Assembly (NCBI GenBank): GCA_033442325.1
Contig: JAWQFM010000015.1
Location: 1,466,687-1,488,909, forward strand
DNA: 22,223 nucleotides
Source: Salpingoeca rosetta
Lineage: Eukaryota > Protista > Choanoflagellata
Direction: 5' to 3'
Shown here one piece after another: positions 723-22,223 of the stretch. The notes beneath the pieces were generated by a model. It made no database searches, was not told the DNA's origin, and saw nothing but the letters and a program-made list of their open reading frames with translations. Made by a program: the position numbers and the translations under genes. Every line of letters begins with the position of its first letter. Position 1 is the first letter of the stretch.

Positions 723-2291
723 ATGGCTGCTGCCAAGTCCATGTGCCGCTTGTGGCCGGGCGTCACCGTCGCCAGCGTCGCCGTCGTTCTGCTTGCGCTG
801 TGTTTGCTGCATAGCGTACCACCTGTCTCCGCTGTTGTGACTCGCTCCGTGACGCGGGGAAACGAGACCGTCACCCACCGCACCTTCGTTGTTGCCGCTC
901 TCAGCGACAAAGGTTGGTGATGACGCAAATCGACAGACCCACTTTGAACTTTTGAGCCTGGACCGAAAAGGAGTGCTTCTGTCTGACTTCTGTCTGGTTT
1001 GGCGTGTGGGGAACGACATCCAGCAGTCTGCCTCATCATCATCTTTGAAAGACACTTGGATACAGCCAATGAATGTGCTTCGAGTTTCGTGGTGACAACA
1101 TGTACAACGCTGAAGCGCACACCTTTCCTCCAAACTACATATCCTCACGTCTTGTCCCCTCCTTGAACACATACACACATACGTACATACACACATACAC
1201 ATACGTACATACACATACATACACAAATACACGCACGCACATACACACACGCATGCACACGCACGCACACAAATAGGCTTTGACTACTTCAACAAGACGC
1301 TCGCACCCACGTTCGACGTGTATCTGAACCGTGTGCTGAGCGAAAAGTACGACGGACTGGTGTCCGTCGTCACGTATCCAACGCAGTTTAAAGATCTCAT
1401 TGACGATGGCCTTGACGACAAGTATGACTTTGCTTTCACCAACCCGGCGCTGTTCACCTGCGTGGAGGCAGAGCTCGGGATGTCCGCACTGCTTACACTG
1501 CGTCGCTTTGATCTCGGTGAGGCTTGGTCCTGCCTTATGGATGTTGTTGTGTTTGTTCGTGTGGGTTGGCCCGCGTTGGGTTTCGGGACAAAGCACACAC
1601 AGGCGAGGCGCCAAGATGTTCTTGGTCACTCACTCTCTCCTGCTTGCGATATGATGATAGGCGAGGAGCTGAGCCAGTTTGGCGGCGTCATCTTCACACG
1701 TGCAGACCGCGACGACATCAACACCCTGCATGATGTGATCAACAAGCAGGTCGCCGCTGTGTCTTTCATCACGTTTGGTGGCTTCCAGTCGCAATGGGGC
1801 AAGCTTCGCGCCGCAGGCGTGGACTTTCTCGTCGACACGGAACAGGTGATTGGCACGAAGTGAAACAGCACGTGCTTTGCGTCAATGTCTCTGTGTCAAA
1901 TGCATGAAATAATGTGTGTGTATGTGGCTGCTGGGGGAATCTTGCCTTGCTTGAGTGCGTTTGGCAAGGTGTTGACTTTATGTTAAACTCGACCAGTACG
2001 GTCCGCTTCTGTGTCCACGCACACGCAAGACCTCCACGTATCTCACCACGTCAAAACGCTGTGGTTCTGATTTAACCCCTCTCTCCCCAGGTCAAGTTCA
2101 CTGGAGATGAGAACCTTGTCGTGGAGGAGGTCATGGAAGGCCGAAGTGACATTGGCTTCGTCACCACAGGCGTTCTCGAAGGTGTGTGGTTGTGCGATTG
2201 TAATGTACGCGTGGGACGTGCGTTTGGTTGTTTGATCGTGGTGCGCGTGAGTGGGCACGTGAGTGAGAGAGAGAGTGTGTGTGTGTGTGTG

Positions 2292-2324
<33 letters not shown>

Positions 2325-2974
2325 TGTGTGGGTGAATGAGCATATGAATGTGCGGCTGTGCCCTTGTGTGCTTGTGCTTATGTGTATCCATTTGTGCTGG
2401 ATCTGCATACCATGTACATTGCGCACGACTGGGCGTCTGCTTGTGTCTCACTCTGCAACTGCCACCGTCTACTGCATTCTGTTACCACCCACTCACGGTT
2501 CAGCCCAAGTGTTCAATGGAACGCTGGACCTGAAGCAAGTGAAGATCCTCGAGGCCGAGAACGTCATCACAACGGAGGGGAACGTGTTTCCCTTTATCAC
2601 ATCAACGGAGGTGCTTTCCCCTGAATGGGCGTTGGCTGCGCTCCCGACCGTTGACTGGCAGGTATGGTGTCAGCATACACGCCTGGCCATTCACCACTGT
2701 AAGCACTCCTGCGGAGTTGCAGAGAGCCCTAGCCAGCACGCCAAACGAAAACTTGCGACTCCACTCTTGCCACATTCACCAACCCCGCACACCCACTAAC
2801 TCACCCTCACCTTCGCACCCACACTCATAACCACTTCGTGTGCCATGGGTTAGATTCAAGTGGACGTGATGGATGCTCTGATTGCACTCGAACCAACTTC
2901 TGAGTTTGCCATTCAGGGCCGCTACGCTGCTTGGCAGGCACCACTCTCCTACACCGTCACCCGTGCCCTCCAGG

Positions 2975-3046
<72 letters not shown>

Positions 3047-4839
3047 AGTCTGACGTTTGTACTTGCTGGCACCGTGGGCTAGTTATCCTGCTGCATTCTG
3101 TGTTCGTTTGGGCAATCAGTGCTCCCATTCATATGCAACCCTGCGGAACACGTCTACTACATGCACACATACACACACGCATGCACAAAACTCGCTCACA
3201 CTCACACATCCTCATCCACACTCGCTGCCCCTCTTGCCCCCTCTCTAACACGCATGCACACACACACGTATGTACACGCACATGTCTTAGGTGTCCCTCG
3301 GGGTGATGTTTGCGGATGGTCTGGGCTCGTTCTCCTGTGTACGCACCAAGTCCATCATTGAGGCCGTCGTGTGCCCGTTTGGATTTGTCAAGAAGTCTGA
3401 TGAGGAAGTTGCCATGGGCTGTGAGCTCGCAGGCATCGACTGCAGCGAGGGCTACGACTGCCTGTGCCAGCCGTGCAAGCCAGCGTGCCCGGCCAACGCC
3501 CGCCTCCTGAGCACGGGCGACTGCGAGTGTGAGCCTGGCTACGTCCAGCTCGGCACAGCGTGCGCCCCTGTGGCCGTGCTCGTCATCACCATCCTCATCC
3601 CGCTCACAGCGTTTATCGTCGTCATTGTGCTAGTGGCCATGCGCTATCAGCAGAAGAAGGTCGACACGCTGTGGCACATCCGCCCCTTTGAGCTCAAGTT
3701 TGAGGACCCCGTTGACGTGCTTGGCGTGGGCACGTACGGTGTGGTTGTCAAGGCCGAGTACCGTGGCACGTCCGTCGCAGTCAAGCGCGTTGGTCCACCA
3801 GACCTCCACCGCAGGCGCACGCACGCCAGCCTGGCCACCCGCGACAAGCAGGGCGTGCTGAGCCCGGCTGTGCTTGCAGGCATTCGCGCCGCGCAGGGGT
3901 CGAGCTCCAACTTCAAGCGCAAGTCCCCAAGGAGCAAGCGCCGTTCAAAGACGTCAAGCACAGTGCTCGGGTCCATCAAGACGCGAGAGAGGAGAGCCAT
4001 GGAGTACATCGTGGAGGTGAGGTGGCAGGCGTGTGTTTGTGTATGTGGTGGTGTGAAAGATGTGCGCGGCGTGTGTGTGTGTGTGCAAGGTGTGTGTAAG
4101 TGTGTGTGCGCGCGCGTTCGTGCGTGCCTACACAGCTGTGAGTGAGCGTGTGGCAGCTTTCAGCGAGCTCAAGTCGAGCGCTGCTCCCTGTCAACCACTC
4201 ATAGACTCATATGCACCCGCATGTACTCCTGCTCATGGTGTTGGCCGTTATAGGTGTTTGATGAAGCTGCAGACCAAGCACAGGGCCACCAGTCGACAAC
4301 CAGGTAAGTGCAATGAACGACATGACGAGACAGCTGCTGCGGAGGATTGGGAAGGGGGGGGGGGAGCTAAGGCTTCGGTGAGGTACCTAGGCTGATGTGT
4401 TGCATGACGCAGACCTTGGTCCTGGCGGTGTGATTTGCATGAGACGACTCACTCCTTGAATCACGTCTTCCTTTTCACGGTGTTATGCAAACAGGGCCCG
4501 GACCACCAAGTCCGGAGAGCAGGGCGGACGCACGCTGTTTGGGCGCATGCTCGGAAAGGCGAGCACACGCGCCACCCTGATCAAGATGAGGTGGGTTTGC
4601 TCGTCTGTTTGTGTTTGTTCGTGGTACTAGCCCTGTATTGTATGCTGTGGCATGCCCTTGTTGTGGGAGTGGATCGTGGTTGCATGCTGTCACGAAGGTG
4701 CCGGCGATGCACCTCCCAAAGTGCGGTTGTCATTATGCATACGCGCTCGCCCTCTTTCTTTAATCATGCGCTCGCATGTTAACACATGCACACACACACA
4801 CACACGCATACACGCACGCGCACGCACGCACGCACACAC

Positions 4840-4879
<40 letters not shown>

Positions 4880-6233
4880 GCACACACACGCACACACACA
4901 CACACACACATGCACACACACACACACACACACACAGGGACAACTTCATTAAGGAGATGCGCACGCTGTCCAAGCTGCGGCACCCATGTGTGACGACGGT
5001 TATGGGAGCGGTGATGATCAAAGGATTTGAGCCGATGATGGTGATGGAGCACATGGACCTGGGAAGCCTCTACTCCATCCTGCACAACGAAACCATGGAG
5101 CTCGATGGTGAAACACGGTACCACGTGGTACGTAACAGTAAGGGCACGGTGTGTGGTGAGTGCTGTTGCGGTTGCGTGAGCTATGTGCTTGGTGTTAACA
5201 CCACTTGACCTTCTTTGCCTCGCTGCGTCACACCTCATGATGAGCCACCACATGATCACTGCCATTATCACACAGACGATCGATGTTGTCTCTGGCTGCC
5301 GGTTCCTGCACTCCAGCGATCCGCCCCTGATCCACGGCGACCTCAAGTCCCTCAATGTCCTCGTCGACTCAAAGTTCCGCGCAAAGGTTAGCTGGTGTGC
5401 TGGTATGGGTGTGTGCGTGCGTGCGTACATGTGTGTGTACATGTGTGTGTGTGTGTGTACATGTGTGTACATGTGTGTACCTGTGTGCGTGCGTGCATGT
5501 GTGCGTGCGTGCATGTGTGCGTGTGCGTGTGTGCGTGTGCGTGTATTTGCAAGTGTGCATAATTCGCTCGTTGTCAGCGCTCATCCTGGATCCCCACTGT
5601 TCCTCGCAGGTGTCTGACTTTGGCCTGAGCGAGTCTGGGAGCGGTAAGGCGTGCGGCACCCCGTACTGGATGGCCCCGGAGGTCCTGCGCGGCGAGCCAA
5701 CCAGCGTCGCCTCAGACGTCTACTCCTTTGCCATTATTCTGGTGAGTTGGGTATGATGGCGTGTGTGTGTTTAGGCATGCGTGTGTACCTTTGCACGTTT
5801 GCACGATTGCACCTTTGCACCGTGTCTTTCGTTCGTCCCTCATACTCTCATACTCTCGCACCAACTCACACGGTTTGCTCATCCCACCACCACCACCACC
5901 ACTGCCTCCAACCAGTTTGAGATCTTCAGCCGCAAGGACCCGTACCCGGCAGACACTGATCTCGAGAACACGTTGAAAGAGGTGATCAAGCGCAAGCGCC
6001 GTCCGCTCGTACCGGCCAACTGCCCCGATGTCATTGCGCAGCTGATGCGGGAGGCGTGGCACCCCGACCCGGATCGCCGGCCCTCCTTTGACGAGCTGGC
6101 CCGCCGCTTTGGGCACATTGACCCCTCTGATTGCCGTGTTGAGGAGTACAGCAAGAAGGGCAAGGACTCGAACAAGGTGCTCGAGGACGTCTTCCCGCCA
6201 CACATCGCAAAGGCCCTTCGCGAGGTGAGATGT

Positions 6234-6306
<73 letters not shown>

Positions 6307-8269
6307 ATACACGTGTGTGCACGTTTGTGTTTTTGTGTGTATTTGTGCGTGAATGTAATTGTGTGCTGCACCCTTTGCACCGGATGCACTTCTCCTCCGC
6401 ATACCCTCAAGTTGCAACCTCCTCCATTGTGCCCGCCTTTCCTCATCCATCCATCCAACCCTAAACCCACAACCCTGCTCTCTGCTCCTCTCTTCCTCTC
6501 CTTCGCACCACGTCGCACCACCAGGGCAAGAAGATTGAGCCCGAGCACCACGACTGCGTGACCATCTTCTTCTCGGACATTGTGGGCTTCACCACCATCA
6601 GCTCCACGCTCAACCCGCAGGACGTCATGAACATGCTCGATCGCCTCTACACCAAACTCGACGCCCTCGCCGACGAGATGGAGCTCTTCAAGGTCGAGAC
6701 CATCGGCGACGCCTACATGGCAGGTGCGGTCACAAGGTGGTGTGGGGGCGGTGCTTGTGTGTTGTGTGTGTGCATGTCTATGTGCGTGTCTGTGTCTCTG
6801 TGTTGCCTTTCACGAGTCTCATCGATATGATACGCAAGTTTTTTCGCTTCCTCACCATCATCACACGTCCCCTCTTGTCCTCCTCTCCCACCCCCTTCAT
6901 ACTCTCAGTGACGAACCTGTTGAAGGAGCAGAAGGACCACGCTGCGCGCATCGGCCGCTTTGCCGTTGCCGCCATCAAGGCCGCCAACAGCACGCTGATC
7001 AAGGAGGACGAGCCAGACCTCGGCTGCGTCAACATCCGCGTTGGCTTCCACTCCGGCCCCGTCGTTGCAAACGTCGTTGGCACGAAGAACCCGCGATACT
7101 GCCTCTTCGGCGACACGGTGCGCATTATGTGTGTGTGTGTGTGCGTGTGTTTGTGTGTGTGTGTGTGTTTGTCTGTCTGTGTATGTATGTGCGTGGGTGT
7201 GTCTGTGTGTGTCTGTGTCTGTGTCTGTGCTTGTGTGTGTCTTTGTATGTGTGTGTCTGCCACTGTTGTATCACGCCTTCTTTGCCTGCTCTCTCCCCAC
7301 CCCTTCTCCCCACCCTCTCGTCACGCATCCTCACGCCAACCCTCGTCAACCAACACATCCTCCACTCCCCCACCCCCACTACCCCAGGTCAACACGGCGT
7401 CGCGAATGGAGAGCAACAGCGAGAAGAACCGCATCCACATGTCTGAGGCCGCGGCGGAGCTGGTGTTGCAGCAGGCGCCAGACATGCTGCTGGAGCCACG
7501 CAAGGCAATGCACATCAAGGGCAAGGGCAAGATGCAGACGTACTTCCTGATTGCAGACGACATTGACCACGCCAGCAGCAGCGACACCGCCGCGCTGTTT
7601 GAGACGAAGCGCAAGGCGAGCAGTGGCGCCCACGACGCTGCTGACGACATGGCTGCTGCTGATGAGACAGTGCTGAGGGAGGCGGAAGAAGAAAGCGACG
7701 AGGCGGCAGACACCATGGCACGCAATGGTGATGTTGATGGCACCACCGAAACGGAAGCACCTGCAACGCCCAAGCGTGGACTGGAGCGCCGGGTCTCGAT
7801 TTCAAGCATTCTGCACGTGATCGGAGGCAACGACAAGGTCAGCAATGACAACCCCAGAAGCGATGCCAGAGACACATCGCAGCTCGATGGCAAGGGCGCA
7901 TGTGGCCCTTCGCGTTCGTTCTCGCGAACGACGAGCGATGCCGGCGTCGCGGACATGGCCGCCCAGTTGCGCGGTAGCGATGGTGAAGACGACGACGACG
8001 ACGACGACGATGGTGATGGTGCCAGTGTGAAGCTGAACTCATGGATGGGCAAAGCAGCGGGAAAGCATCCGCAGCGCAATGGCAGCGATGCTAGCAGCGG
8101 CGGCAGCAGCAGCAGCAGCGCAGCGAGCACAAGCAACAACGGGAGCACAAGCGGGTTTGGCTCAGACGACATTGGCCAGAGCAAGACTGACGCCCAGGGT
8201 CACAGGATGGCATGGACGGTGCAGGACACATCGCTCAACGACGCCGACAACAGCGAAGTCCTCATCTGA
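723..8269 (+). CDS. Receptor kinase-guanylyl cyclase (~1295 aa): signal peptide, PBP2/Phosphonate-bd-like ectodomain, Cys-rich EGF-like region, TM, TKL-type protein kinase, signalling helix, class III guanylyl cyclase, acidic/Ser-rich tail
   Basis: 16 phase-consistent GT-AG exons: 723-912, 1277-1516, 1661-1845, 2091-2181, 2504-2661, 2854-2973, 3291-4016, 4254-4303, 4495-4590, 4938-5127, 5276-5386, 5610-5741, 5916-6224, 6525-6723, 6909-7117, 7388-8269 (3888 nt). Ectodomain motifs: [40 protein letters not shown]: [24 protein letters not shown]. Kinase: [50 protein letters not shown]. Cyclase: [62 protein letters not shown]. Confidence 0.93.
2974..3043. repeat. Intronic (GT)n microsatellite beginning at the splice donor
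   Basis: CAG|GTGTGT... near-perfect run. Confidence 0.9.
4785..4936. repeat. Intronic (CA)n/(CACG)n tract abutting the splice acceptor
   Basis: The run ends ...CACACACAG|GGACAAC at the start of exon 10. Confidence 0.9.
6235..6305. repeat. Intronic (GT)n microsatellite
   Basis: Perfect run about 10 nt after the exon 13 donor. Confidence 0.9.
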
Positions 8270-9360: not shown

Positions 9361-10127
9361 ATCAGTTGTAAATCGTGGCACTCATGCACCAAGCTGAACC
9401 GCTGCAAATTATGCAGCACAAACACACACAGACACACAGACATACCAGAATGGTCCGTGTGATGGACTGGCACTTGACAGTTCGCAGCATACGGCGAATG
9501 AGGTGTCCCCGAAACACAGATGCAATGCACGTGGCTGCAGCGTCTGCATCCCAGGTGCGAAGAACCGGCCGGCGTCGAAGTTGTTGTTGTTGTTGTTGTG
9601 GTGGTGGTGGTGGTGGCGGTGGTGCGGCAACAACATCACGCCGATGCTGATGCAAGTGGTGGTGTTGGCTGGTGCTTGCAGTGGTGGAAGGCATAGAGCT
9701 TGTTTCCAGCAAAATGTCAGCACTACTCAGGACGCCATCGTCGTCATCACTCCAGGGCTCTTCCCCCGCTGACGACACTACGACGTTGACTGCGCGCATC
9801 TCGTTGACAATGACAGAGGAATGCTTTGCCGGCGATGGCACCATGGTCAGAAATTGCGGCTGCAAGTCTTGTTCGCTGTCCAAGTCTTCAGACTCACGAC
9901 TCAAGCGCATGCCCCCGTCATTCCCATCGTTGTGCACGGTCTGTGCGTGGTGCATCGGTGGTTGTTTGTAATCTCCGTTGTTGTTGCCATTGTTGCTGCT
10001 GCTTGATGGTTTGTGCGGCTGTGATTTGTGGGTGCTGGTGTGTGGTTGGGCTGGTGCAGTTGACGTTTGGGGTCCGGCGGTGCTCAGGCGCAACAGCAGT
10101 GCAGCAACAGCATCTTCCACCTCATCC

Positions 10128-10200
<73 letters not shown>

Positions 10201-10763
10201 GGTTTGCGATTTGTACAAACAGCGGTGGGTATTGCTCTCGTTTCGGGAGAGGGAGGGACAGGCCCAAGTCTGGGTCTTCTGTGGCCGCTGCTCTTGTTGT
10301 TGATGATGGCATTGCTGTTGTTGTCCGGGAGGAGGAGGGCGCACGGCCCGGTTGCTGCTGCCGTGAGGTTGGCCGAGAGCGAACGGGGGACAGTGGCAAG
10401 GTGATGCGCGCATGGCGTTTCGCCTGAGACGAGCTCAAGACCGAGCGCTCGTCCGGCGAGTCGTTTCGCTCATCACGTACGGCGGTGCTGTTGTGTGTGG
10501 TGGCCGCGGCGGCGGTTGAGCGGAGCCCAGTTTCTTCTCTCTTTGCTGCATTGTGCATCGCTGCCGTGCCTCTTTGCTTTGTGAGGCGGCTCGCAACAGC
10601 ATGGCACTGCTGGCGAATCAGTGCAATCTCCTGGCGCTTCTCCGGCGATACCTGTGTGTGTTGAAGGAGGGGGAACGAGGAGGGTTTGAACCAACAACAA
10701 AGGAGAGAGTGACGGCAACAAGCATGCACGGAAAATGGCTTTCGTGCTCGCTTTCCCCCCCCT

Positions 10764-10826
<63 letters not shown>

Positions 10827-11281
10827 CACACACACACACACACATACGCACAACGGATGCACACAACGGATGCACACAGCAGATGCACACACAGATGCAC
10901 AGGGACTGACCACTGGTGGGAGGATTGGACGGCCAAAGTACTTGATGGTGGATGTGTACGTGTCTACACGCGACCGTCTGAGGGCGAGCGAGCTGGACAG
11001 GCTGTCCAACAGCCTCAGGGGATCATCCTGGCTCACAAACACGCTTCCCTGTCCACGCGTGCACAGATTGGTGTGAGTACATGATGACGCATTTGCGGGT
11101 GGCATGAACCAGCGGCACATGTGCTGTGAACGCGAGAGAGGAAAGAGAGAGGGACAGAGAGAGAGAGGGAGGGAGGGAGGGAGGAAAACGGAAGTGGGGG
11201 AAGCGAGACAGACATTGCGGGGGAGGGGGCGAGAGTCACTCCAAGACAAAGACAGCTCACCAGTCGCGAGGTTGTCACCAT
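8570..11281 (-). CDS. CCP110: CP110 (centriolar coiled-coil protein 110)-like protein, ~510 aa, with an IQ-like C-terminal block and a 25-Gln tract
   Basis: Proposed exons (-): 11281-11261, 11027-10911, 10651-9446, 9216-9122, 8873-8805, 8594-8570. All are GT-AG and phase-consistent; the first and last exons are least certain. The N-terminal TIKYFGRPILPPVVSPEKRQEIALIRQQ resembles the CP110 N-terminal block (IRFHG..IL.PLL..EKRKEM, recalled). The C-terminal IASVFRGHLIRRMLRT.K...I.RTILD...AQLQAARDELHRL...PAQRVRFL resembles the CP110 C-terminal block (KGFLTRRLMQT...AQLRAAL..IH.IF....ERMSIL, recalled). Confidence 0.75.
9285..9359. repeat. Intronic (GT)n/(CA)n microsatellite in CP110-like intron 3
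   Basis: Perfect dinucleotide run. Confidence 0.9.
10127..10201 (-). repeat. Coding (CAA)24CAG polyglutamine tract (25 Q) in the CP110-like gene
   Basis: In-frame pure CAA run within exon 3. Confidence 0.9.
10766..10843. repeat. Intronic (CA)n microsatellite ((GT)n on the coding strand) in CP110-like intron 2
   Basis: Near-perfect run. Confidence 0.88.
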
Positions 11282-11380
11282 AGTCGGTGGTCGTCGCTGC
11301 CGTTGCAAAAATTTCCAAAACACGTTGGGCAGGAAAGACACAACAGACGCTGACTGGCTGCTGCAACAACCAGGAAGAAG
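11282..11380. promoter_or_regulatory. Putative very compact bidirectional promoter/5' UTR region between the CP110-like and Gon7-like genes
   Basis: Only 99 nt separate the two divergent proposed ATGs; there is an AT-rich patch GCAAAAATTTCCAAAA. This depends on the 21-nt CP110-like exon 1 being correct. Confidence 0.4.
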
Positions 11381-11549
11381 ATGAGCGAGGTGGTGGCTGA
11401 GGTTGAGGGCCCCGGCTGGACTGAGGTGGTGAAGGTGCCGCGCGGCAGCGCGGAGACACTGTCCAGTGTGCTTGGCACTGCGAAAGAGCAAATCAACGCA
11501 GCCATCACCAAACACATGGAAGGCGACACAACACAAGAAGGTGTGTGGT

Positions 11550-14540: not shown

Positions 14541-15227
14541 GGTTCCTTTGATATCGCTGTGATGAGGTTGTGGCTATGGTGTGGTTGTGGTTGTTGATTG
14601 GTTGCAGGCTGCTTGGTTGATTGGTTGTTGGGGTCGTGGGGGTGGCCTTGTGCTTCGCTGCCGTCGTCTGCTAGCTGCTGCTGACCCAAAATGACACCCA
14701 ACAAACCAACTGGCCTGCCGTGCACCTGCTGGTGTGATGAGGAGACAGGCAAACAACGATCGTGATGCCTCGGAGGCCGTGTTGTTCTTGTGTTCCTTCC
14801 TCCCTGAGTCCCTTGTCGCTCGCTCGCTCACCCGCCGCCCCCTCTCTCTGCGTTGCGCACGTCCTAAAATAAAAACAATCACAGCGCTTAAGCAGTCGTG
14901 AACACGCGTGGGCAGTGTAGTCCGTGTGCCCGTGTGTGCAGTCAGCCGCTGTTCTTTGGTTGGTTGCCTTGCTCGCTTGCTTCCTTCGCTTGCTTGCTGT
15001 GCGTCTGCCTCCTGCCATCATCATCATCATCGACTGCATTCTGCTGCAGAAGCAAGAGTTCTCACAACCGTCCTCTTCGGTGCTCCGTTGCCCAACGACG
15101 ACAGGCGACATACAGACATATACACGGATATCTAACCATCGATCACAACCATCAAACGCACGCGCTCCACCACACCACACACCCACACCCACACCACACC
15201 CACACCACACCCACACACGCGCGCACA

Positions 15228-17735
15228 ATGGTGATGACGCGCGCTGCTTCCTGGTGGTTGGTGGTGGTTGTGGCGACAGCAGCAGCATTGCTCAGCGGCA
15301 CACGCGTGTGTGCCCAAGACTATGGCCTTGTCGTGGAGTATGACGCCACTGACGACGCCAACAACCACAACTACAACCACAACGCCAGCAGCAACCAGCC
15401 TTCGCTGCATGTGAAAAGCCGCGGGCATATCCACGTGCAAAGTGGTCAAGGGCAGCAAGGGACGCGACAAGGGCAAGCAACATCAAGGGCAGCAACAGGA
15501 GGGCAAGGGCGCGTGGTGGTGAACAGTGTGCCGGTGGTGGACCAGTTGAACAACCTGTCGCAGGCCATTTTCGATATCCGCGACCAGCTCCTCAACATCA
15601 GCGCGGCCACATCTGCCTCCCGCGCAAGCAGCAGCAACAACGCTGACAACAACGACATCATCAACAGCAACAGCAACAGCACCAGCAATGCGGGCGCCGA
15701 CTGCGTCGTGGACACCTTGTTTGTCCTAAACTGTTCCGACCCCATCTCACGCGCGGCGTTTGTGCTGTACAGGATTTGCGGCGTGTACGCGGTGGAGGAC
15801 TGCTGCTGTCCCGAGATCGCTGCAATCACGAGCATCGCCACGCACATTGCCGTCGCGCCCCATGAGCAACATCTGCGCTTTCCGGCATTGGAAACAATGG
15901 AGAGTCCCATCCGTATCTCAAACACAAAGCTTGTCTCTATCCGCTTTGACGCGCTCAGCTTGGTTCCATCGCACGTCTTCATCAGCTCCAATCCCCATCT
16001 CGTGGAGGTGCACGCGAATCAGTTGACCTTCGTACGCTCAAGCGTTATTTTCCGCGACAACGCACAGCTGGGCATCATCAGCATGGCCAACCTCTCTTGG
16101 GCTCGTTCGGCGGTGCGGGTGGTGAACAGCCCGAGATTGCACAGCATCAACTTCGACAGCCTTGCTCGGGTCAACATGTTTGTACTGTCGAACACGGGCC
16201 TGGCCAGCCTGCGCTTGGGGCACAGCGTGCCACTCTTCGTTGGCCAGAGAGTCTTCCTCACGGACAACCGCAACCTCGCTACCGTCGACCTGCGCAACGT
16301 CAGCATTAACCGGTTCTTGTACGTTGATGCGGCTCAGGTTGCGGCCTTGGACTTTGAGCAGGTGCGACGGACCGGTGCAACACTCACCATCTGCTGCTCA
16401 GTCAATGGCGGCGACAGCAACAGCGACGACAACAGCAACGACAACAGCAACGACAACAGCAACGCCACCACCCTCAACCTGGCTGACCTGCTGCCGCGCG
16501 AGGTGCCGTTCTCGGTCATGTTTGACCAACTTCCACACATCACCAGCGTTGTCAGCGGCGGCATCAACAGCATGGCTGGCGATCTCGTCATCAAATCAAA
16601 CGAGCGCCTCGGTGCTGTGGACCTGTCCAGCATCACGACCATCAATGGCGACCTTCAAGTCTCCGACAACGCCGAGCTCACCTCCCTGCTGCTCAGCCCG
16701 GCGCTGACGCAGGTGCTGGGGAACGTGCTGCTGTTCAGCAACAACTTCCAGCACGCGCCCCTCGGCAGTCTGCGGTCTGTTGGTGGCGCCCTGCAGCTCT
16801 TCGGCAACAACATCACCGCCCTGGACGGGCTCGGCCAGCTCACCTCCATCGGAGCCTCCCTGGACCTGAGCTCCAACCCGTTGGGCACACTCGACATGAA
16901 CGACCTCCCGCCCGTCGCCGGCAGCATCTTCCTGCGGCTGTGCGGCCTCACCACCCTCATCCCTCCAACCAGCAGCAGCAGCAGCATGGGTTTCACGCGG
17001 ATCAACGGCACGCTCGACCTGTACAACAACTTGCTCACCCACTTTGATGCTGGCGCCATCACACACGTTGCTGGCACCCTCCGCGTCTACAACAACAGGC
17101 TGCGCAGCGTGGAGTTTCGTGGGCTGACGTACATTGGTGGCGCTCTGGACCTGTTTGGCAACGCAATCACGAGCATAAGCCTCGAGCCGCTCACACACGT
17201 GGGCGGGGACGTGAAGCTGGCCAACAACGCCCTGACGCACGTCTCATTTGGCAGCCTGGCGGAGATAGGCGGCGGCCTGATGCTTGGCACGAACGCATTT
17301 GCCTCGCTCGCCTTTACCAACGTGACGCGCATTGGCAAGGACCTTGAGGTGACGTCGATCCACTCGCTGACGTGGTTTGACTTTGGTTCGCTCCGCTCAG
17401 TTGGTGGCCACGTGCATGTGACCGGCAACGGCCTGCAGAGCCTGAGGTTCGGCGACCTCACGCGTGTAGACGGTGACCTGAGTCTGTACCTGAACGATTT
17501 GACGGCCATCTCCTCATGGGGTTCGCTGTCGCATGTTGGTGGAGACCTGCAACTGGACGGCAACAGCTTCACCTCCCTCAACCTCACGTCGCTGGCCTTT
17601 GTCGGTGGTGAAATCAGGGCGTCCCACATGCCGGGCATGGCTCTGTTGGACTGCGCTGGATTGGGGCTGTGTCTCTGCGTTGATCCCAACATCATCGTTT
17701 CAACACGCTGCCCTCCTCCCTGCTCCGAGTGCTAG
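15228..17735 (+). CDS. Secreted receptor L-domain / LRR-like beta-solenoid protein (~835 aa, intronless)
   Basis: Lies inside ORF 14898..17735. First ATG at 15228 is followed by signal peptide [30 protein letters not shown]. There are many ~22-aa repeats of consensus LxxVGGxLxLxxNxLTxLxFGx (e.g. [45 protein letters not shown]), many N-x-S/T sequons, Cys-rich caps at both ends and no TM helix. Confidence 0.88.
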
Positions 17736-18233: not shown

Positions 18234-18442
18234 TGTAAGTCAGTGCCACGCGGGGGATGACTCATCAAGTCACGACAGCACAAACAAACAAAAAGAGGGT
18301 GGAACGGACATCCTTCTTTTCCTTTGTCTTTGTTGTCTTTGTCGCTTGCTTGCGCGCATTTTCCCACTGCTGTCCGCACACCCTCCGACAACAACAGCCA
18401 CAGCAAAGAAGGGACGAGGAGACAGACGACACAGACAAAGCC

Positions 18443-21400
18443 ATGGACCCCGGCGGCGACCGCGTGAAGCTGCTGGACCTGGCTGAGGAAGGCAATGTGG
18501 TCGAGCTACAAGCAGACAGACACGGGCATGGTGAGCATGCCATGGTTGCCTACGCTTGGACGGATGAACACAACAGCAGCAAGCAGAAACGCCACCGTTG
18601 CGGCAGCATCATGGGCGACACTGCTGCGATCAAAATGAGCTCTTCCACGGACATGGCCGGCAACATGGACGCAGCCACCACCACCACCACCACCTCCGCA
18701 ACGACTGGCCAGCACCGAGCCCGCCGCGCATGCAAGTGGCTCACTGGCCTGATGGCCTTTTCCGCAGTCCTCTTTGGTGTCTCGCTTGGCGTGTCGCTGT
18801 ACGTGCTGCTGCACAACACCAACATGGACGACGCATCCCTCAACGCCGTTGACATCTACATCATCGACACGGCTGCCTCCGACGGTGGCACACTCGCCTC
18901 CTCACCGACGCCCCCACCACAGAACCCCAACAGCGGCGGCAGTGGTGGCGATGGGCCGCCAAGCTCCTCGTCATCATCAGCGTCATCGTCAGCGGGCACC
19001 GGCGCGCCTGCAGACGTGGTCATCACCTTGAACGCCACCTTGCCAGACATCGCCAGCGCCCACACCATGCACATTGGAGAGGCAAGCTGTGCCATTCTGG
19101 TGGGCGGCGAGGACCTGGCCCTGGCAGAGCTTCCCGTCGGCGTGAGCCTCGGTGCAAGCCACCACCGGACCATTGTCACCAACGTGACCATCCGCGTGTC
19201 CAGCCTCGAGCGCATTGGGCACCTCCGCTCCTCCTTCCTTGCGTCCCTCCACCACGGCTCTCAGCAACAGCTGCCGGTCGTGACGGCTCGTTGCCGTGTC
19301 CCTGTGGATGTGGACGTCTTTGGTGCCATCCACGTCGGGCCCTTCACCCTGGACACCACCCTCAACATCACCGACATCCTCACCAGCCTGGGCCACAGCG
19401 CTCTCGCCTACATGGAGGCGCAAGGTGCATCTCCGCCACAGCCGGATCAGCCGTTCACAAGCACCAGCAGCACCACTACTACCAACAACAACACCAACAA
19501 CAACGACAACACCAGCGACCAAGACCCCAAGCCCGGCGTGGTTGGCGATGGTCGTCACAACGCGGATCCAATGTACCACACCCACGTTGGCCAGCAGCAA
19601 CAACAACAACAACAACAACAGCAGCAGCAGCGCGGCACAGAGGAGGCCGCCTCGCTGGTGCTGCACGTGACGGGGCTGAAGTCGACCACGACCGCCACCC
19701 CAGTCACCATCGGCTCCTTCCCCGCATCGCTTGTGCGCTCTCACCTTCCCCTGGACAGGGCAACCCTGCACCTGCCTCAGTCCACCTTTCTGCTGTGGAC
19801 CAAGACGCCTGCATTGGTCTCTCTGTCCTCCAGCGCGCCCTTCTGGGAGACGCTGCCAGAAGCAGGCCCGCTGCGCCCATGCAAGCTTGGAGAGGACGTC
19901 GTGGTGGTGGGCTTTCACGACCACAGCATCCCGCTTGTCCTCGGTGGGCAACTGCAGGCGGATGTGCACGTGGAGGTCCTGTCAGCATCAGCAACGCTTG
20001 ATGTCGACGGTAGCTATGCAGCAGAGGCCCTGCTCGCCAAAGCCGCCGCGTCCAGCTCTAGGGCTGGGGCCGGTGGCCTGCTGCCACTGCTTGGCAGGCA
20101 GTTTGGCACGGCGCTGCTGTCTCAACATGCCACCACATACTTCCGCTCTGCACAGAAGCGGGACAACGTGCTCACGCGTGCTCTCGGCCATTTCCACCTC
20201 GCGCAGGAGTACAACCCCGACGCCGGCAGTGCTGGTGGCACCACCGACGCAGATGCAGACGCACTTGTGAACGCCTTGCTGCCGCCAGACCTACACGACA
20301 CGCGCTCGCACCTGTTGCACGCCATCAACAACGCCACAGATCACCGCCGCCGCCGCCGCAATGACGACGACAACGACACCAGCGCTGACGCGTGGACCCG
20401 TCTTGGCTTTGCCCTGCGTGCCCGCTTGTTTGATTCGCTGAGCAGCAGCGCCCAAGGCGGCATTGCCGGCAACGTCACTGTGATGACAGGCGCCCTGGGC
20501 AGCGTCAAGGACAACGTCATCGTCACCCTGAGTGGCAGCCTCTCTGCGCACGGCAGGGTGCAGGGCGCAGGCATTGGTGCATTCAGCTATGACAGTCGCG
20601 AGCAGAACGCATGGGCTGAGGTTGACATCCACGCCCCGCAGTGGCCAGCAGCGTGGCTGAACATGTCGGCGTCCGCGACATGGACAGGCAGTGGCGCAGA
20701 AACGCACGTGGTCTTGCACCACTCCATCGCGTTCCAGAGCACGGGCGAGACCATCGTCGGCCACGCGACAGGCACCCAGCAAGGTGCCCACACATCGATT
20801 CAGCACTCGCTCGTGAGCAGTGACGATGACGGGGGCGTGTGGGGCATCCACGCGTGGCACGCCAACATCAGCGCTTGGAATGTCCCGCAGGGCGCACGGG
20901 CACGCGTGTGTGTGAACAGTAACAGCACCAGCGGGCGTGACGGCGATGGCGGCGATGGCGGTGATGGTGGGGTCTTCATTGACGGCACGGGAGTGTTTAG
21001 CGATGATGCGTGGGAGAGCATTCGTGCGTTGTGGAACGCCAGTGTGAACGGCAATGTGCGTGATAGCGCGGTTGCCGTGACGACCACTGCAAAGTTCAAG
21101 CGCCGCGCAGATCTCCCCGCATCCCCAATGGCGTGTCATTTCCTCTCAACGGATGACGAGCACATCGTGTTCGACTTTCGCATGCATGGGGAGGCGCATG
21201 CTCACGCACTCCTGTACGCCGATGCAACGACAACAGAGACAGAGAGCTACCGCATCCTGGACGTTGACGTCCCCGCTGCCGGTTTGTACGTGAATGGCGA
21301 GACGCTGTTCGCCATCAATGACTGGTACAAGTTCCAGGTGGTGCAGGGCCGGTGGGACGTGTACAATGCAACCCCACCAGCCACCGACTTCTCGCTGTCG

Positions 21401-22223
21401 TGGCTAACGGCGGTGCAGGTGCAGGAGGAGTATGGGACGGTGGCGTGCAACATCCTGGTTGAGCGTGGCGGGTACGTTGAGACGGATGTGTCGTGGTCTG
21501 GGAGCGACCGGTTTGCGCTGACGATGCACGCGAACGCGACGACGACTGAGACGGAGAGCTACCGCATCCTGGACGTTGAGGTGCCTGCAGCGAGCCTGGA
21601 CGTGAACGGCGAGACGCTGTTTGCCATCAATGACTGGTACAAGTTCCAGGTGGTGCAACCGCAACCGTACGCGTGGAACCCGGTTCCGCGGACCGACTTC
21701 TCGCTGTCGTGGCTGACGGCGGTGCAGGTGCAGGAGGAGTATGGGACGGTGGCGTGCAACATCCTGGTTGAGCGTGGCGGGTACGTTGAGACGGATGTGT
21801 CGTGGTCTGGGAGCGACCGGTTTGCGCTGACGATGCACGCGAACGCGACGACGACTGAGACGGAGAGCTACCGCATCCTGGACGTTGAGGTGCCTGCAGC
21901 GAGCCTGGACGTGAATGGCGAGACGCTGTTTGCCATCAATGACTGGTACAAGTTCCAGGTGGTGCAGGGCCGGTGGGACGTGTACAATGCAACCCCACCA
22001 GCCACCGACTTCTCGCTGTCGTGGCTGACGGCGGTGCAGGTGCAGGAGGAGTATGGGGACGGTGGCATGCAACATCCTGGTTGAGCGTGGCGGGTACGTT
22101 TGAGACGGGATGTGTCGTGGTCTGGGGAGCGACCGGGTTTGCGCTTGACGATGCACGCGAACGCGACGACGACTGAAGACGGAGAGCTCCGCATCCTGGA
22201 CGTTGAGGTGCCTGCAGCGAGCC
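18443..22223 (+). CDS. Large type II membrane protein with a LEA_2-like beta domain and a 103-104-aa tandem repeat array; 3'-partial
   Basis: Lies inside ORF 18257..22084; probable start GCCATGG at 18443. One TM at 18737-18811 (WLTGLMAFSAVLFGVSLGVSLYVLL) follows basic residues (HRARRACK). It is followed by a LEA_2/WHy-like strand pattern (~19013-19370), polyQ/N linkers, RRRRR at 20345-20359 and a beta-rich region, with repeats from ~21225. The stop at 22082-22084 comes from a +1 G relative to the earlier repeat copies and is probably a sequence error. Confidence 0.82.
21225..22223 (+). repeat. Coding tandem repeat, three full units plus the start of a fourth; periods 312, 309 and 318 nt (the last includes net +6 indels)
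   Basis: Anchor CGCATCCTGGACGTTGA begins at 21251, 21563, 21872 and 22190. The units are nearly identical in DNA apart from a 33-36-nt variable segment. Confidence 0.95.

What the first reader, a model, noticed from the sequence alone, without database searches (positions are those of the whole stretch)
3700..7550. Kinase domain appears catalytically intact: a dual-output kinase + cyclase receptor rather than a pseudokinase rGC
Seen: GVGTYG loop, VAVK lysine, alphaC glutamate (KEM), HGDLKSLN with catalytic Asp and Asn, DFG and APE are all present. The cyclase keeps both metal-binding Asp (SDIV, IGDA), the GTP-specifying Glu (KVET) and Cys (RYCL), and the N/R pair (NTASR). Known: metazoan rGC kinase-homology domains generally lack the catalytic Asp (HGNLKS-type). 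Inference: either an ancestral-like or an independently assembled receptor with two live enzymes. It is also a non-RD kinase with a very short activation segment ([18 protein letters not shown]).
Basis: partly seen in the sequence, partly recalled or inferred. Interest (0 to 1): 0.72.

Follow-up and report, generated by a model that had tools for sequence, protein, structure and literature searches.

The report
Choanoflagellate receptor: intact kinase plus guanylyl cyclase
This Salpingoeca rosetta gene encodes a cell-surface receptor in which a protein kinase that looks fully functional is fused to a cGMP-making enzyme; it belongs to a large, unstudied protist family, and the same genome also carries the animal-type receptor whose kinase is already dead.

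Summary
Nine GT-AG exons (3291-8269, + strand) encode a transmembrane helix, a TKL-type Ser/Thr kinase and a class III guanylyl cyclase. Every kinase catalytic residue is present: GVGTYG, VAVK, alphaC Glu, [14 protein letters not shown]. The cyclase carries the GTP-type Glu/Cys pair.

The gene is from Salpingoeca rosetta. It is one of at least 14 paralogs in this genome that keep H-G-D. Databases hold more than 2,400 relatives (diatoms, choanoflagellates, Balamuthia). In 206 of them the catalytic Asp is kept in 202 of 202 aligned sequences. Kinase exons show dN/dS of 0.006-0.18, about as constrained as the cyclase.

The kinase-linker-cyclase module aligns collinearly with human GC-A, where HGN replaces HGD. 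The kinase alone is closest to the active kinase CTR1.

New here: the same genome also has an animal-type rGC on contig 9 with a degenerate kinase domain (no Gly loop, HGR, DYG). The dead-kinase and live-kinase lineages therefore split before animals and choanoflagellates diverged, so this gene is not an animal-rGC ortholog frozen in an ancestral state.

Paralogs are already annotated (TKL/DICTY4 kinase; guanylate cyclase). This scan noted the same family in other windows of the genome. Kinase activity is untested, and no RNA evidence could be obtained.

The parts
723..3290 (+). Upstream exons of the same gene: signal peptide (ATG at 723) and a PhnD-type (Phosphonate-bd) binding-protein ectodomain. 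The exon limits here were not re-derived by me.
Evidence: The ORF at 645-920 has a signal-peptide-like start. Pfam PF12974 matches 1318-1860 at 3.5e-7. tblastn of paralog P0121 maps residues 55-319 to 1276-2973.
3291..4021 (+). Exon holding the Cys-rich stalk, the TM helix (3570-3638), the kinase N-lobe with the Gly loop GVGTYG (3723-3740) and beta3 VAVK (3774-3785), and then the first part of the basic Ser/Thr-rich beta3-alphaC insert.
   Evidence: Acceptor ag|GTGTCC and donor AG|gtggca; open frame of 243 aa. 73% identical over its whole length to the matching exon of annotated paralog P0121. The N-lobe aligns with the CTR1 Gly loop and Lys.
4495..4590 (+). Small exon holding the second part of the beta3-alphaC insert (ends ...ATLIKM, and the split codon gives R).
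   Evidence: GT-AG junctions. This exon is the only way to keep the frame between 4021 and 4938. It corresponds to the 51-aa exon of P0121 (residues 561-611), which ends ...ATLARMR.
4938..5127 (+). Kinase exon running from alphaC (FIKEM, Glu at 4954-4956) through beta4, beta5 and the hinge to alphaE.
   Evidence: Pfam PK_Tyr_Ser-Thr 2.2e-10. 87% identical to P0016 residues 611-673. dN/dS 0.07-0.09.
5276..5386 (+). Kinase exon with the catalytic loop HGDLKSLN (5333-5356). The catalytic Asp is at 5339-5341 and the Asn at 5354-5356.
   Evidence: 97% identical to three paralogs. dN/dS 0.006-0.075. Aligns to HGNLKSSN of GC-A and HGRLKSTN of GC-C (through paralog P0121).
5610..5741 (+). Kinase exon with DFG (5616-5624), a 22-residue activation segment, the P+1 loop and APE (5673-5681), and the alphaF Asp (5712-5729).
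   Evidence: Pfam Pkinase 8.7e-10.. 93-100% identical to paralogs.
5916..6224 (+). Kinase C-lobe (alphaF-alphaI, with the Arg of DRRPSF at 6072-6089) and the linker helix [16 protein letters not shown] (6177-6224) that leads into the cyclase.
   Evidence: Pfam PK_Tyr_Ser-Thr 1.8e-8, reaching the end of the profile. Maps contiguously on P0016 residues 755-857. The linker aligns with the LPxxVAxxLKxG segment of GC-A.
6525..6723 (+). Cyclase exon 1: first metal Asp (FFSDIVGFT 6567-6593), then the GTP-specifying Glu and the second metal Asp ([11 protein letters not shown] 6690-6722).
   Evidence: Pfam Guanylate_cyc 1.8e-17..
6909..7117 (+). Cyclase exon 2: Arg of [10 protein letters not shown] (7031-7060) and the GTP-specifying Cys (RYCLFGDT 7094-7117).
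   Evidence: Pfam Guanylate_cyc 7.2e-26 for the ORF that spans this exon and the next..
7388..8269 (+). Last exon: the transition-state Asn/Arg pair (VNTASRMES 7388-7414), the end of the cyclase (about 7560), a 236-aa acidic, Ser-rich tail that ends in EVLI, and the stop codon at 8267-8269.
   Evidence: The tail evolves fast (dN/dS 0.5-0.7).

Best explanation
The stretch is the cytoplasmic half of a real, multi-exon Salpingoeca rosetta gene for a single-pass receptor. Its domains run in this order: signal peptide, PhnD-type binding-protein ectodomain, Cys-rich stalk, TM helix, TKL-group Ser/Thr kinase, short linker helix, class III guanylyl cyclase, and a disordered acidic/Ser-rich tail.

Shown:
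- The kinase keeps every residue needed for phosphotransfer. It is a non-RD (HGD) kinase with a 22-residue activation segment and a beta3-alphaC insert of about 117 residues.
- These traits, and the catalytic residues, are conserved across a large family in choanoflagellates, diatoms and Balamuthia.
- The cyclase carries, on one chain, both metal Asp, the Glu/Cys pair of GTP-specific cyclases and the Asn/Arg pair.

Inferred:
- The receptor works as a homodimer whose two cyclase domains form two symmetric cGMP-making sites, as in animal rGCs.
- Ligand binding outside re-sets the dimer.
- The kinase is catalytically alive. Its most likely main substrate is the receptor itself, in trans, on the basic Ser/Thr-rich insert and the Ser-rich tail. 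Phosphorylation would then tune cyclase output, as multisite phosphorylation by unknown kinases does for animal GC-A and GC-B.
- Phosphorylation of other proteins is possible but has no evidence.

The gene is a member of this protist family. It is not an ortholog of animal rGCs, whose dead-kinase form is present separately in the same genome.
For: Gene structure:
- Nine exons have GT-AG junctions, a continuous frame and one terminal stop.
- The junctions k2 to c3 map contiguously on the transcriptome-derived relative P0016 (residues 611-1049). They also agree with the annotated paralog P0121, which is 100% identical to the C1 locus.

Domains:
- Pfam gives PK_Tyr_Ser-Thr, Pkinase, Guanylate_cyc and Phosphonate-bd.

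Organism and annotation:
- Paralogs are named 'TKL/DICTY4(/DRK) protein kinase [Salpingoeca rosetta]' by NCBI and 'guanylate cyclase' by UniRef.

Kinase intact:
- All motifs are located.
- The best solved relative of the kinase is the active kinase CTR1 (148 bits). TAK1 and TNNI3K follow at about 110 bits. The GC-A kinase-homology domain scores below 100 bits.

Conservation:
- 14 loci in this genome show H-G-D-L-K.
- In 206 family proteins the counts are: HxD Asp 202/202, beta3 Lys 150/150, alphaC Glu 170/172, Asn 200/202, DFG Asp 201/202, APE Glu 202/202.
- Family hallmarks are a Lys-to-Glu spacing with median 126 aa and a 22-aa activation segment in 128 of 195 proteins.

Selection:
- dN/dS is 0.006-0.18 for kinase exons and 0.03-0.32 for cyclase exons. 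It is 0.45 for the insert and 0.5-0.7 for the tail.

Relation to rGC:
- One collinear alignment with GC-A (E 1e-77) and with GC-C.
- The Foldseek best hit is the GC-A intracellular domain (E 1e-34, 484 columns).
- The AF2 model is confident for the kinase core and the cyclase and has low pLDDT in the insert.

Separate animal-type rGC in the same genome.
Against: - No enzyme activity has been measured for any member of the family that I could find.
- I obtained no RNA evidence for this particular copy. The runs that hold the stretch are not on record as RNA.
- A 117-residue insert sits in the N-lobe, between the ATP-anchoring Lys and its partner Glu. It could hinder the Lys-Glu bridge.
- The activation-segment block of the AF2 model has only moderate confidence (pLDDT 59-72).
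- Motif retention shows selection for something that needs these residues. It does not show that the target is the receptor itself.
- The window's own full-length protein did not appear in the protein searches. Whole-module comparisons therefore rest on paralog P0121, which is 73-97% identical per exon.
Confidence: 0.6

Rival explanations
1. The kinase domain binds ATP and acts only as an allosteric or regulatory and dimerising module of the cyclase, as the animal kinase-homology domain does. The intact motifs do not translate into physiologically relevant phosphotransfer.
For: The module is collinear with GC-A and GC-C, and the GC-A intracellular domain is its best fold match. Animal KHDs bind ATP through the beta3 Lys without catalysis (PMC4718504). 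The long N-lobe insert is unusual for an active kinase.
Against: ATP binding alone does not need the catalytic Asp, the catalytic-loop Lys/Asn or the P+1 loop. Animal rGCs, and the animal-type rGC of this same genome, lost exactly these residues. Here they are invariant in about 200 relatives. The exon carrying HGD has the lowest dN/dS of the gene (0.006-0.075).
Confidence: 0.15
2. A true dual-output receptor. The kinase phosphorylates separate downstream proteins and so opens a signalling branch that is independent of cGMP.
For: The substrate-binding elements are fully conserved ([10 protein letters not shown]+1 loop, alphaF-alphaI). The closest solved kinases (CTR1, TAK1) are MAP3K-type kinases that phosphorylate other proteins.
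Against: No substrate, docking motif or partner is known. Kinase and cyclase stay fused across the whole family with a conserved short linker, which suggests functional coupling. Nothing here separates trans-substrates from self-substrates.
Confidence: 0.2
3. It is the choanoflagellate ortholog of animal receptor guanylyl cyclases, preserving the ancestral state in which the kinase was still active.
For: Choanoflagellates are the sister group of animals. The module is collinear with GC-A. Some family members even carry an ANF_receptor ectodomain (PF01094 together with PF07714 and PF00211).
Against: S. rosetta has a separate gene on contig 9 (with a probable twin copy that I did not examine beyond a PF00211 hit) with ANF_receptor, EGF repeats, TM and a kinase-homology domain lacking the Gly loop, with HGR in place of HGD, DYG and WTAPE. 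That domain matches GC-A at 114 bits, against 46 bits for the best true kinase. This is the better ortholog candidate. The window gene's kinase is nearer to CTR1 than to GC-A. Its cyclase exons are 72-76% identical to diatom proteins. Its ectodomain is PhnD-type, not ANF-type.
Confidence: 0.07
4. A recently duplicated, unexpressed or decaying copy of the family with no function of its own.
For: There are many paralogs in the genome. I obtained no RNA evidence for this copy. The annotated protein of this locus did not turn up in two protein searches.
Against: All nine exons are open with canonical splice sites. dN/dS against two paralogs is far below 1 in every catalytic exon, although dS reaches 0.5-1.9.
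Confidence: 0.04

Closest known systems
S. rosetta paralogs annotated 'TKL/DICTY4(/DRK) protein kinase' (NCBI) and 'guanylate cyclase' (UniRef), such as P0121 (contig 1), P0080 (contig 12) and P0001/P0002, with their relatives in diatoms, Monosiga brevicollis and Balamuthia
   Same: Same architecture (PF12974 + PF07714 + PF00211). Same HGD catalytic loop, 22-aa activation segment, long beta3-alphaC insert and linker. 73-97% identity per exon to P0121, with the same intron positions.
   Different: A distinct locus (contig 15), with its own insert and tail sequences and a diverged ectodomain. No member of the family has been studied biochemically, as far as the library searches show.
Animal receptor guanylyl cyclases GC-A/NPR1 (PDB 9bcv, 9bcs) and GC-C (8fx4)
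   Same: Single-pass receptor with a kinase-like domain, a linker and a class III GTP-specific cyclase. One collinear alignment from alphaC to the end of the cyclase (E 1e-77). Best fold match.
   Different: The animal domain is a pseudokinase (HGN or HGR; DYG in GC-A; degenerate P+1 loop). Animal rGCs have an ANF_receptor ectodomain and a linker about 20 residues longer than in this gene and paralog P0121, though not longer than in every family member. They have no beta3-alphaC insert.
Animal-type rGC of S. rosetta itself (contig 9, about 1818-1823 kb, loci L019 + L044; a PF00211 match near 1803 kb on the same contig may be a twin copy, not examined further)
   Same: Same genome. Also a TM receptor with a kinase-like domain and a guanylyl cyclase.
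   Different: ANF_receptor plus teneurin-type EGF ectodomain. The kinase-homology domain has no Gly loop, HGRLRS, DYG and WTAPE. It matches GC-A at 114 bits, against 46 bits for the best real kinase.
CTR1 / Raf-like and TAK1-type TKL Ser/Thr kinases
   Same: These are the best sequence matches of the kinase domain among solved structures (148 and 110 bits). It shares the Ser/Thr-type catalytic loop DLKxxN and the GTPxWMAPE P+1 loop.
   Different: They are RD kinases (HRD) with activation segments of about 28 residues, controlled by phosphorylation. They have no cyclase, no TM segment and no N-lobe insert.
Kinase-cyclase fusions with putatively active kinases reported from mimivirus (Biswas et al. 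2009, J Mol Evol 68:587; contents recalled from memory, the paper is not held, and it is cited as ref 139 of PMC4718504)
   Same: A protein kinase domain with catalytic residues fused to a class III cyclase.
   Different: Not checked here. My scan of IMG/VR found only RD-type TKL kinases without a cyclase.

Membership tests
Animal-type receptor guanylyl cyclase (RGC group) | Single-pass receptor with a kinase-like domain followed by a C-terminal class III guanylyl cyclase, collinear with GC-A | tested here: met
   TM helix at 3570-3638. One collinear phmmer stretch with GC-A (E 1e-77) and with GC-C, through paralog P0121. Foldseek best hit is the GC-A intracellular domain.
Animal-type receptor guanylyl cyclase (RGC group) | The kinase-homology domain is a pseudokinase: the catalytic Asp is replaced (HGN/HGR) and the Gly loop is degenerate | tested here: not met
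   HGDLKSLN at 5333-5356 and GVGTYG at 3723-3740. GC-A has HGN and GC-C has HGR at the aligned position.
Animal-type receptor guanylyl cyclase (RGC group) | ANF_receptor (type I binding-protein) ectodomain | tested here: not met
   The ectodomain matches PF12974 Phosphonate-bd, not PF01094.
Animal-type receptor guanylyl cyclase (RGC group) | The kinase-like domain is nearest to rGC kinase-homology domains rather than to true kinases | tested here: not met
   CTR1 148 bits and TAK1 110 bits, while GC-A is absent from the best 60 (below 100 bits). In contrast, the contig 9 gene of the same genome scores 114 bits to GC-A and 46 bits to its best true kinase.
Active eukaryotic protein kinase, TKL group, Ser/Thr type | Pfam kinase domain with all catalytic residues: Gly loop, beta3 Lys, alphaC Glu, HxD Asp, catalytic-loop Lys and Asn, DFG, APE, alphaF Asp, alphaH-I Arg | tested here: met
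   The same residues are invariant or nearly so in 206 relatives and in alignment A2.
Active eukaryotic protein kinase, TKL group, Ser/Thr type | Canonical spacing of about 16-20 residues between the beta3 Lys and the alphaC Glu | tested here: not met
   About 117 residues here. The family median is 126. The insert has low confidence in the AF2 model.
Active eukaryotic protein kinase, TKL group, Ser/Thr type | Measured phosphotransfer activity | not testable with these tools
   Needs a recombinant protein assay. No published assay was found.
Class III nucleotidyl cyclase, guanylyl-specific, homodimeric | PF00211 domain with two metal-binding Asp and the Asn/Arg transition-state pair on one chain | tested here: met
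   Guanylate_cyc at 1.8e-17 and 7.2e-26. The residues lie at 6567-6593, 6690-6722 and 7388-7414.
Class III nucleotidyl cyclase, guanylyl-specific, homodimeric | Glu and Cys at the two base-specifying positions (adenylyl cyclases have Lys and Asp) | tested here: met
   KVETIGD and RYCLFGD, aligned to the same residues of GC-A and GC-C. In the family, Glu is 190/193 and Cys is 143/185.
Class III nucleotidyl cyclase, guanylyl-specific, homodimeric | cGMP synthesis and dimer formation demonstrated | not tested
Dimerisation is inferred from the mechanism of class III cyclases.
Protist binding-protein / TKL-kinase / guanylyl-cyclase receptors (database family, annotated TKL/DICTY4 in S. rosetta) | Architecture PF12974 (or another binding-protein domain) + PF07714 + PF00211, with an HGD loop, a 22-aa activation segment and a long beta3-alphaC insert | tested here: met
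   73-97% identity per exon to annotated member P0121. The two proxies used for this gene, P0121 and P0016, fall in a choanoflagellate clade with 100% SH-aLRT support.

The most novel reading that the evidence does not exclude
The live kinase is the receptor's own priming kinase. It phosphorylates the basic Ser/Thr-rich beta3-alphaC insert and the tail in trans within the dimer, and this sets cyclase activity. On this reading the family shows the state from which animal rGCs evolved: they lost catalysis and handed priming to still-unidentified kinases. S. rosetta carries both the live-kinase and the dead-kinase forms and is genetically tractable. It would therefore let one test directly how and why a receptor's kinase became a pseudokinase.
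Probability: 0.25. Interest if true: 0.7.

Novelty: new member of a known kind. Interest (0 to 1): 0.45.

Why it matters
Animal receptor guanylyl cyclases (the ANP, guanylin and retinal receptors) carry a dead kinase domain. Its origin is unclear, and the kinases that prime these receptors are unknown.

This gene belongs to a large family with more than 2,400 database relatives. The family is prominent in diatoms and present in the closest relatives of animals. In it, the same module keeps a kinase that looks alive and is under selection as strong as the cyclase.

One choanoflagellate genome holds both forms. That dates the loss of catalysis to before the animal-choanoflagellate split. It also offers a natural comparison in an organism where genes can be edited.

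The ligands and outputs of these receptors are unknown, including in diatoms, which matter ecologically.

The individual gene is an ordinary member of an already annotated family, so its value is as an entry point to that family and not as a discovery in itself.

Tried and rejected
- RNA evidence. The look-up of sequencing runs listed three raw RNA-seq runs of the species. Nothing was laid.
- Spliced model. Exons were searched one by one by reference. The stored proteins P0121 (a paralog) and P0016 (the closest transcriptome relative) stood in wherever a full-length sequence was needed.
- The window's own annotated protein did not appear in either family search. I cannot say whether this locus is annotated as one gene.
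- Trees that include animal rGCs. No animal sequence could be obtained. The third word search, seeded with the kinase-homology domain of the contig 9 animal-type gene, returned only three close protist or metagenome relatives.
- Horizontal transfer from diatoms. Rejected as a recent event. Diatom and MMETSP sequences form one clade (98% SH-aLRT), and choanoflagellate sequences form several deep lineages outside it. The root is unknown.
- Giant-virus link. An IMG/VR scan with the family alignment found only ordinary HRD-type TKL kinases at 27-33% identity, with no cyclase nearby.
- Literature. The Monosiga kinome paper (Manning 2008) is not held. Searches found no study of kinase activity in this family.
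The large representative-protein search was not used, because the family was already clear.

Full report
WHAT IS THERE

The window is contig 15, 1466687-1488909, of a 55.4-Mb genome in 68 contigs. The organism is Salpingoeca rosetta. Paralogous proteins that are 100% identical to other loci of this genome carry the NCBI names 'TKL/DICTY4(/DRK) protein kinase [Salpingoeca rosetta]' and the UniRef name 'guanylate cyclase'.

The finding lies in a multi-exon gene on the + strand. Its introns are full of TG/CA microsatellites.

From 3291 to the stop at 8267-8269 I read nine exons:
- 3291-4021
- 4495-4590
- 4938-5127
- 5276-5386
- 5610-5741
- 5916-6224
- 6525-6723
- 6909-7117
- 7388-8269

All junctions are GT-AG. 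The frame is continuous, there is a single terminal stop, and the nine exons encode 952 residues.

The small exon at 4495-4590 is needed to keep the frame between 4021 and 4938. It matches the 51-residue exon of the annotated paralog P0121.

The six junctions from 5127/5276 to 7117/7388 map without a gap onto residues 611-1049 of P0016. P0016 is an ORF from a transcriptome of a related organism, so it supports these junctions independently of gene prediction.

Upstream exons (723-3290) encode a signal peptide and a PhnD-type binding-protein ectodomain. Another report of this scan covers that part (s1-443189).

Exons were searched by reference, and P0121 or P0016 stood in where a full-length sequence was needed.

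CHECK OF THE OBSERVATION

Kinase:
- GVGTYG 3723-3740
- VAVK 3774-3785
- FIKEM 4945-4959
- HGDLKSLN 5333-5356
- DFG 5616-5624
- APE 5673-5681
- alphaF Asp 5712-5729
- the Arg of DRRPSF 6072-6089

Cyclase:
- FFSDIVGFT 6567-6593
- [11 protein letters not shown] 6690-6722
- RYCLFGDT 7094-7117
- VNTASRMES 7388-7414

Single exons reach Pfam E-values of 2e-10 for the kinase and 7e-26 for the cyclase.

The catalytic loop DLKxxN and the P+1 loop GTPYWMAPE are of the Ser/Thr type.

In direct alignment, through the paralog, human GC-A has HGNLKS and DYG at these places and GC-C has HGRLKS. A published motif table of rGC pseudokinases also shows HGN and HGR (PMC2754085).

A basic, Ser/Thr-rich insert crosses two introns between them. 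It contains three [RK][RK]x[ST] sites.

IS THE KINASE KEPT FOR CATALYSIS?

Three lines of evidence say yes, at the level sequence can reach.

First, the genome. A PF00211 scan found 49 exon-level matches. Fourteen loci have an upstream kinase exon that reads H-G-D-L-K:
- this gene;
- contig 1, two loci on contig 33, and contig 12;
- a second subfamily of nine on contigs 14, 21, 22, 34 and 36 (VHGDLKAKN or VHGDLKTKN).

Second, the wider family. Word searches returned more than 2,400 proteins at E<=1e-10. Nearly all of the listed ones combine PF07714 and PF00211. They come from diatoms (Seminavis, Cylindrotheca, Thalassiosira, Nitzschia, Chaetoceros and others), Monosiga brevicollis, other choanoflagellate-like transcriptomes, Balamuthia and marine metagenomes. 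Their ectodomains are PF12974, PF01094, PF13416, PF12849 or 7tm_3.

Residue counts in the 206 retrieved proteins:

| Residue | Kept |
|---|---|
| HxD Asp | 202 of 202 aligned |
| beta3 Lys | 150/150 |
| alphaC Glu | 170/172 |
| Catalytic-loop Asn | 200/202 |
| DFG Asp | 201/202 |
| APE Glu | 202/202 |

The residue before the Asp is Gly in 169 proteins and Arg in only 6, so the family is non-RD.

The long Lys-to-Glu spacing (median 126) and the 22-residue activation segment (128 of 195) are family traits, not peculiarities of this copy.

Third, selection. dN/dS values against the contig 1 and contig 33 paralogs:

| Region | dN/dS |
|---|---|
| Kinase exons | 0.006-0.18 (lowest in the HGD exon) |
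| Cyclase exons | 0.03-0.32 |
| Insert | 0.45 |
| Tail | 0.5-0.7 |

A domain kept only as an ATP-binding scaffold would not be expected to hold the catalytic Asp, the Lys/Asn of the loop and the P+1 loop invariant. Those are what animal rGCs lost.

WHAT IT RESEMBLES

Whole module (through P0121):
- The best solved relatives are full-length GC-A (E 1e-77) and GC-C (E 3e-61).
- Each aligns in one collinear stretch from alphaC through the linker to the end of the cyclase.
- An AlphaFold2 model of that module has mean pLDDT 82.8. The kinase core and the cyclase score 86-98 and the insert scores 33-54.
- Its best fold match is the GC-A intracellular domain (E 1e-34, 484 columns, 35% identity).
- The linker of this gene and of P0121 is about 20 residues shorter than in GC-A, although other family members have GC-A-like lengths.

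Kinase alone:
- The best match is the active plant Raf-like kinase CTR1 (148 bits).
- TAK1 and TNNI3K follow at about 110 bits.
- The GC-A kinase-homology domain is not among the best 60.

So the fusion as a whole looks homologous to that of animal rGCs, while the kinase retains the character of a working TKL kinase.

THE SAME GENOME ALSO HAS THE DEAD-KINASE FORM

Following a cyclase hit on contig 9, I found a gene on the minus strand at about 1818-1823 kb (L019, L044). A PF00211 match near 1803 kb on the same contig may be a twin copy; I did not examine it further. The 1818-1823 kb gene encodes:
- an ANF_receptor domain and teneurin-type EGF repeats;
- a TM helix;
- a kinase-homology domain with no Gly loop, HGRLRS instead of HGDLKS, DYG and WTAPE;
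- a cyclase whose sequence is strikingly animal-like.

Its kinase-homology domain scores 114 bits to GC-A, against 46 bits to the best true kinase, KSR2.

This is the better candidate ortholog of animal rGCs. The pseudokinase form therefore already existed in the common ancestor of choanoflagellates and animals, alongside the live-kinase family. The window gene is a member of a separate old family, not the animal lineage before its loss.

A family tree of 52 named members (kinase core plus cyclase, with the insert removed) puts all diatom and MMETSP sequences in one clade (98% SH-aLRT). The choanoflagellate sequences fall in several deep lineages outside it. A recent transfer from diatoms is therefore not supported, and the root is unknown.

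I could not bring animal sequences into the session. The decisive joint tree remains to be done.

HOW IT MOST LIKELY WORKS

Shown: the domain order, the intact catalytic sets of both enzymes, and their conservation.

Inferred from the established mechanism of class III cyclases and of rGCs:
- The receptor is a homodimer.
- The two cyclase domains form two symmetric GTP sites.
- Ligand binding to the PhnD-type ectodomain re-sets the dimer through the TM helix and the kinase.

Inferred, with less certainty:
- The non-RD kinase, with its short activation segment, needs no activation-loop phosphorylation.
- It phosphorylates the neighbouring chain on the Ser/Thr-rich insert or tail and so tunes cyclase output. 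GC-A and GC-B require multisite phosphorylation by kinases that are still unknown (PMC3348905 and PMC9672810, abstracts).

Phosphorylation of other proteins (true dual output) is possible and untested. Choanoflagellates have PKG, cGMP-gated channels and cGMP phosphodiesterases downstream (bioRxiv 10.1101/2022.02.14.480389). That paper leaves open whether particulate (membrane-bound) or soluble guanylate cyclases supply the cGMP.

LIMITS

- No RNA evidence for this copy. 
- No activity data exist for any family member that I could find.
- The window's own protein did not surface in the protein searches, so whole-module comparisons rest on a paralog that is 73-97% identical per exon.

VERDICT

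The gene is a new member of a known, already annotated but biochemically unstudied family. This scan has noted the same family in other windows of this genome (s1-431381, s1-436271, s1-436531, s1-436537).

Noticed in passing
L044:336-3368 (-) and L019 (genome contig 9, about 1818-1823 kb); possible twin copy near contig 9 1803 kb: An animal-type receptor guanylyl cyclase in the same genome. It has ANF_receptor, teneurin-type EGF repeats, a TM helix, a degenerate kinase-homology domain (no Gly loop, HGRLRS, DYG, WTAPE) and an animal-like cyclase. Its KHD scores 114 bits to human GC-A against 46 bits to the best true kinase. The 1803 kb locus was seen only as a PF00211 hit.
   Followed up: partly
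window 3291-7558 compared with L031/L023/L028 (contig 33, about 222 kb): Synonymous divergence from the contig 33 paralog drops from about 1.0-1.2 in the 5' exons (3291-4016) to 0.06-0.2 from the HGD exon onwards. This mosaic suggests gene conversion or partial duplication between paralogs.
   Followed up: no
window 8255-8266: The protein ends in EVLI, as does the contig 1 paralog. Other choanoflagellate members also end in x-hydrophobic motifs (VDV, SHV, SVV, EIV, ADI, VEV). This may be a PDZ-type C-terminal ligand.
   Followed up: partly
window 3795-4019: The beta3-alphaC insert holds three basophilic [RK][RK]x[ST] sites (RRRT, KRKS, KRRS). This is the consensus of cyclic-nucleotide-dependent kinases, so feedback by PKG is conceivable.
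   Followed up: no
It lies in the intron between the HGD and DFG exons and bears on none of the conclusions.
   Followed up: no
window 14898-17735 (+) and 18257-22084 (+): Two very long uninterrupted ORFs of 945 and 1275 aa. The first has a Receptor L domain match (6.5e-9). The second has no Pfam match.
   Followed up: no
window 9365-11459 (-): ORFs with weak matches to the CaM_bind family (PF16025), below the Pfam cut-off.
   Followed up: no
L002-L009, L017 (contigs 14, 21, 22, 34, 36): A second subfamily of nine near-identical kinase-cyclase genes, several of them in clusters on contigs 21 and 22. The cyclase domain is on a single exon, and the motifs are VHGDLKAKN/VHGDLKTKN with DFGLSQK(Q/R)RFGCGTP(F/Y)WMAP before an intron that splits the APE codon region.
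   Followed up: partly
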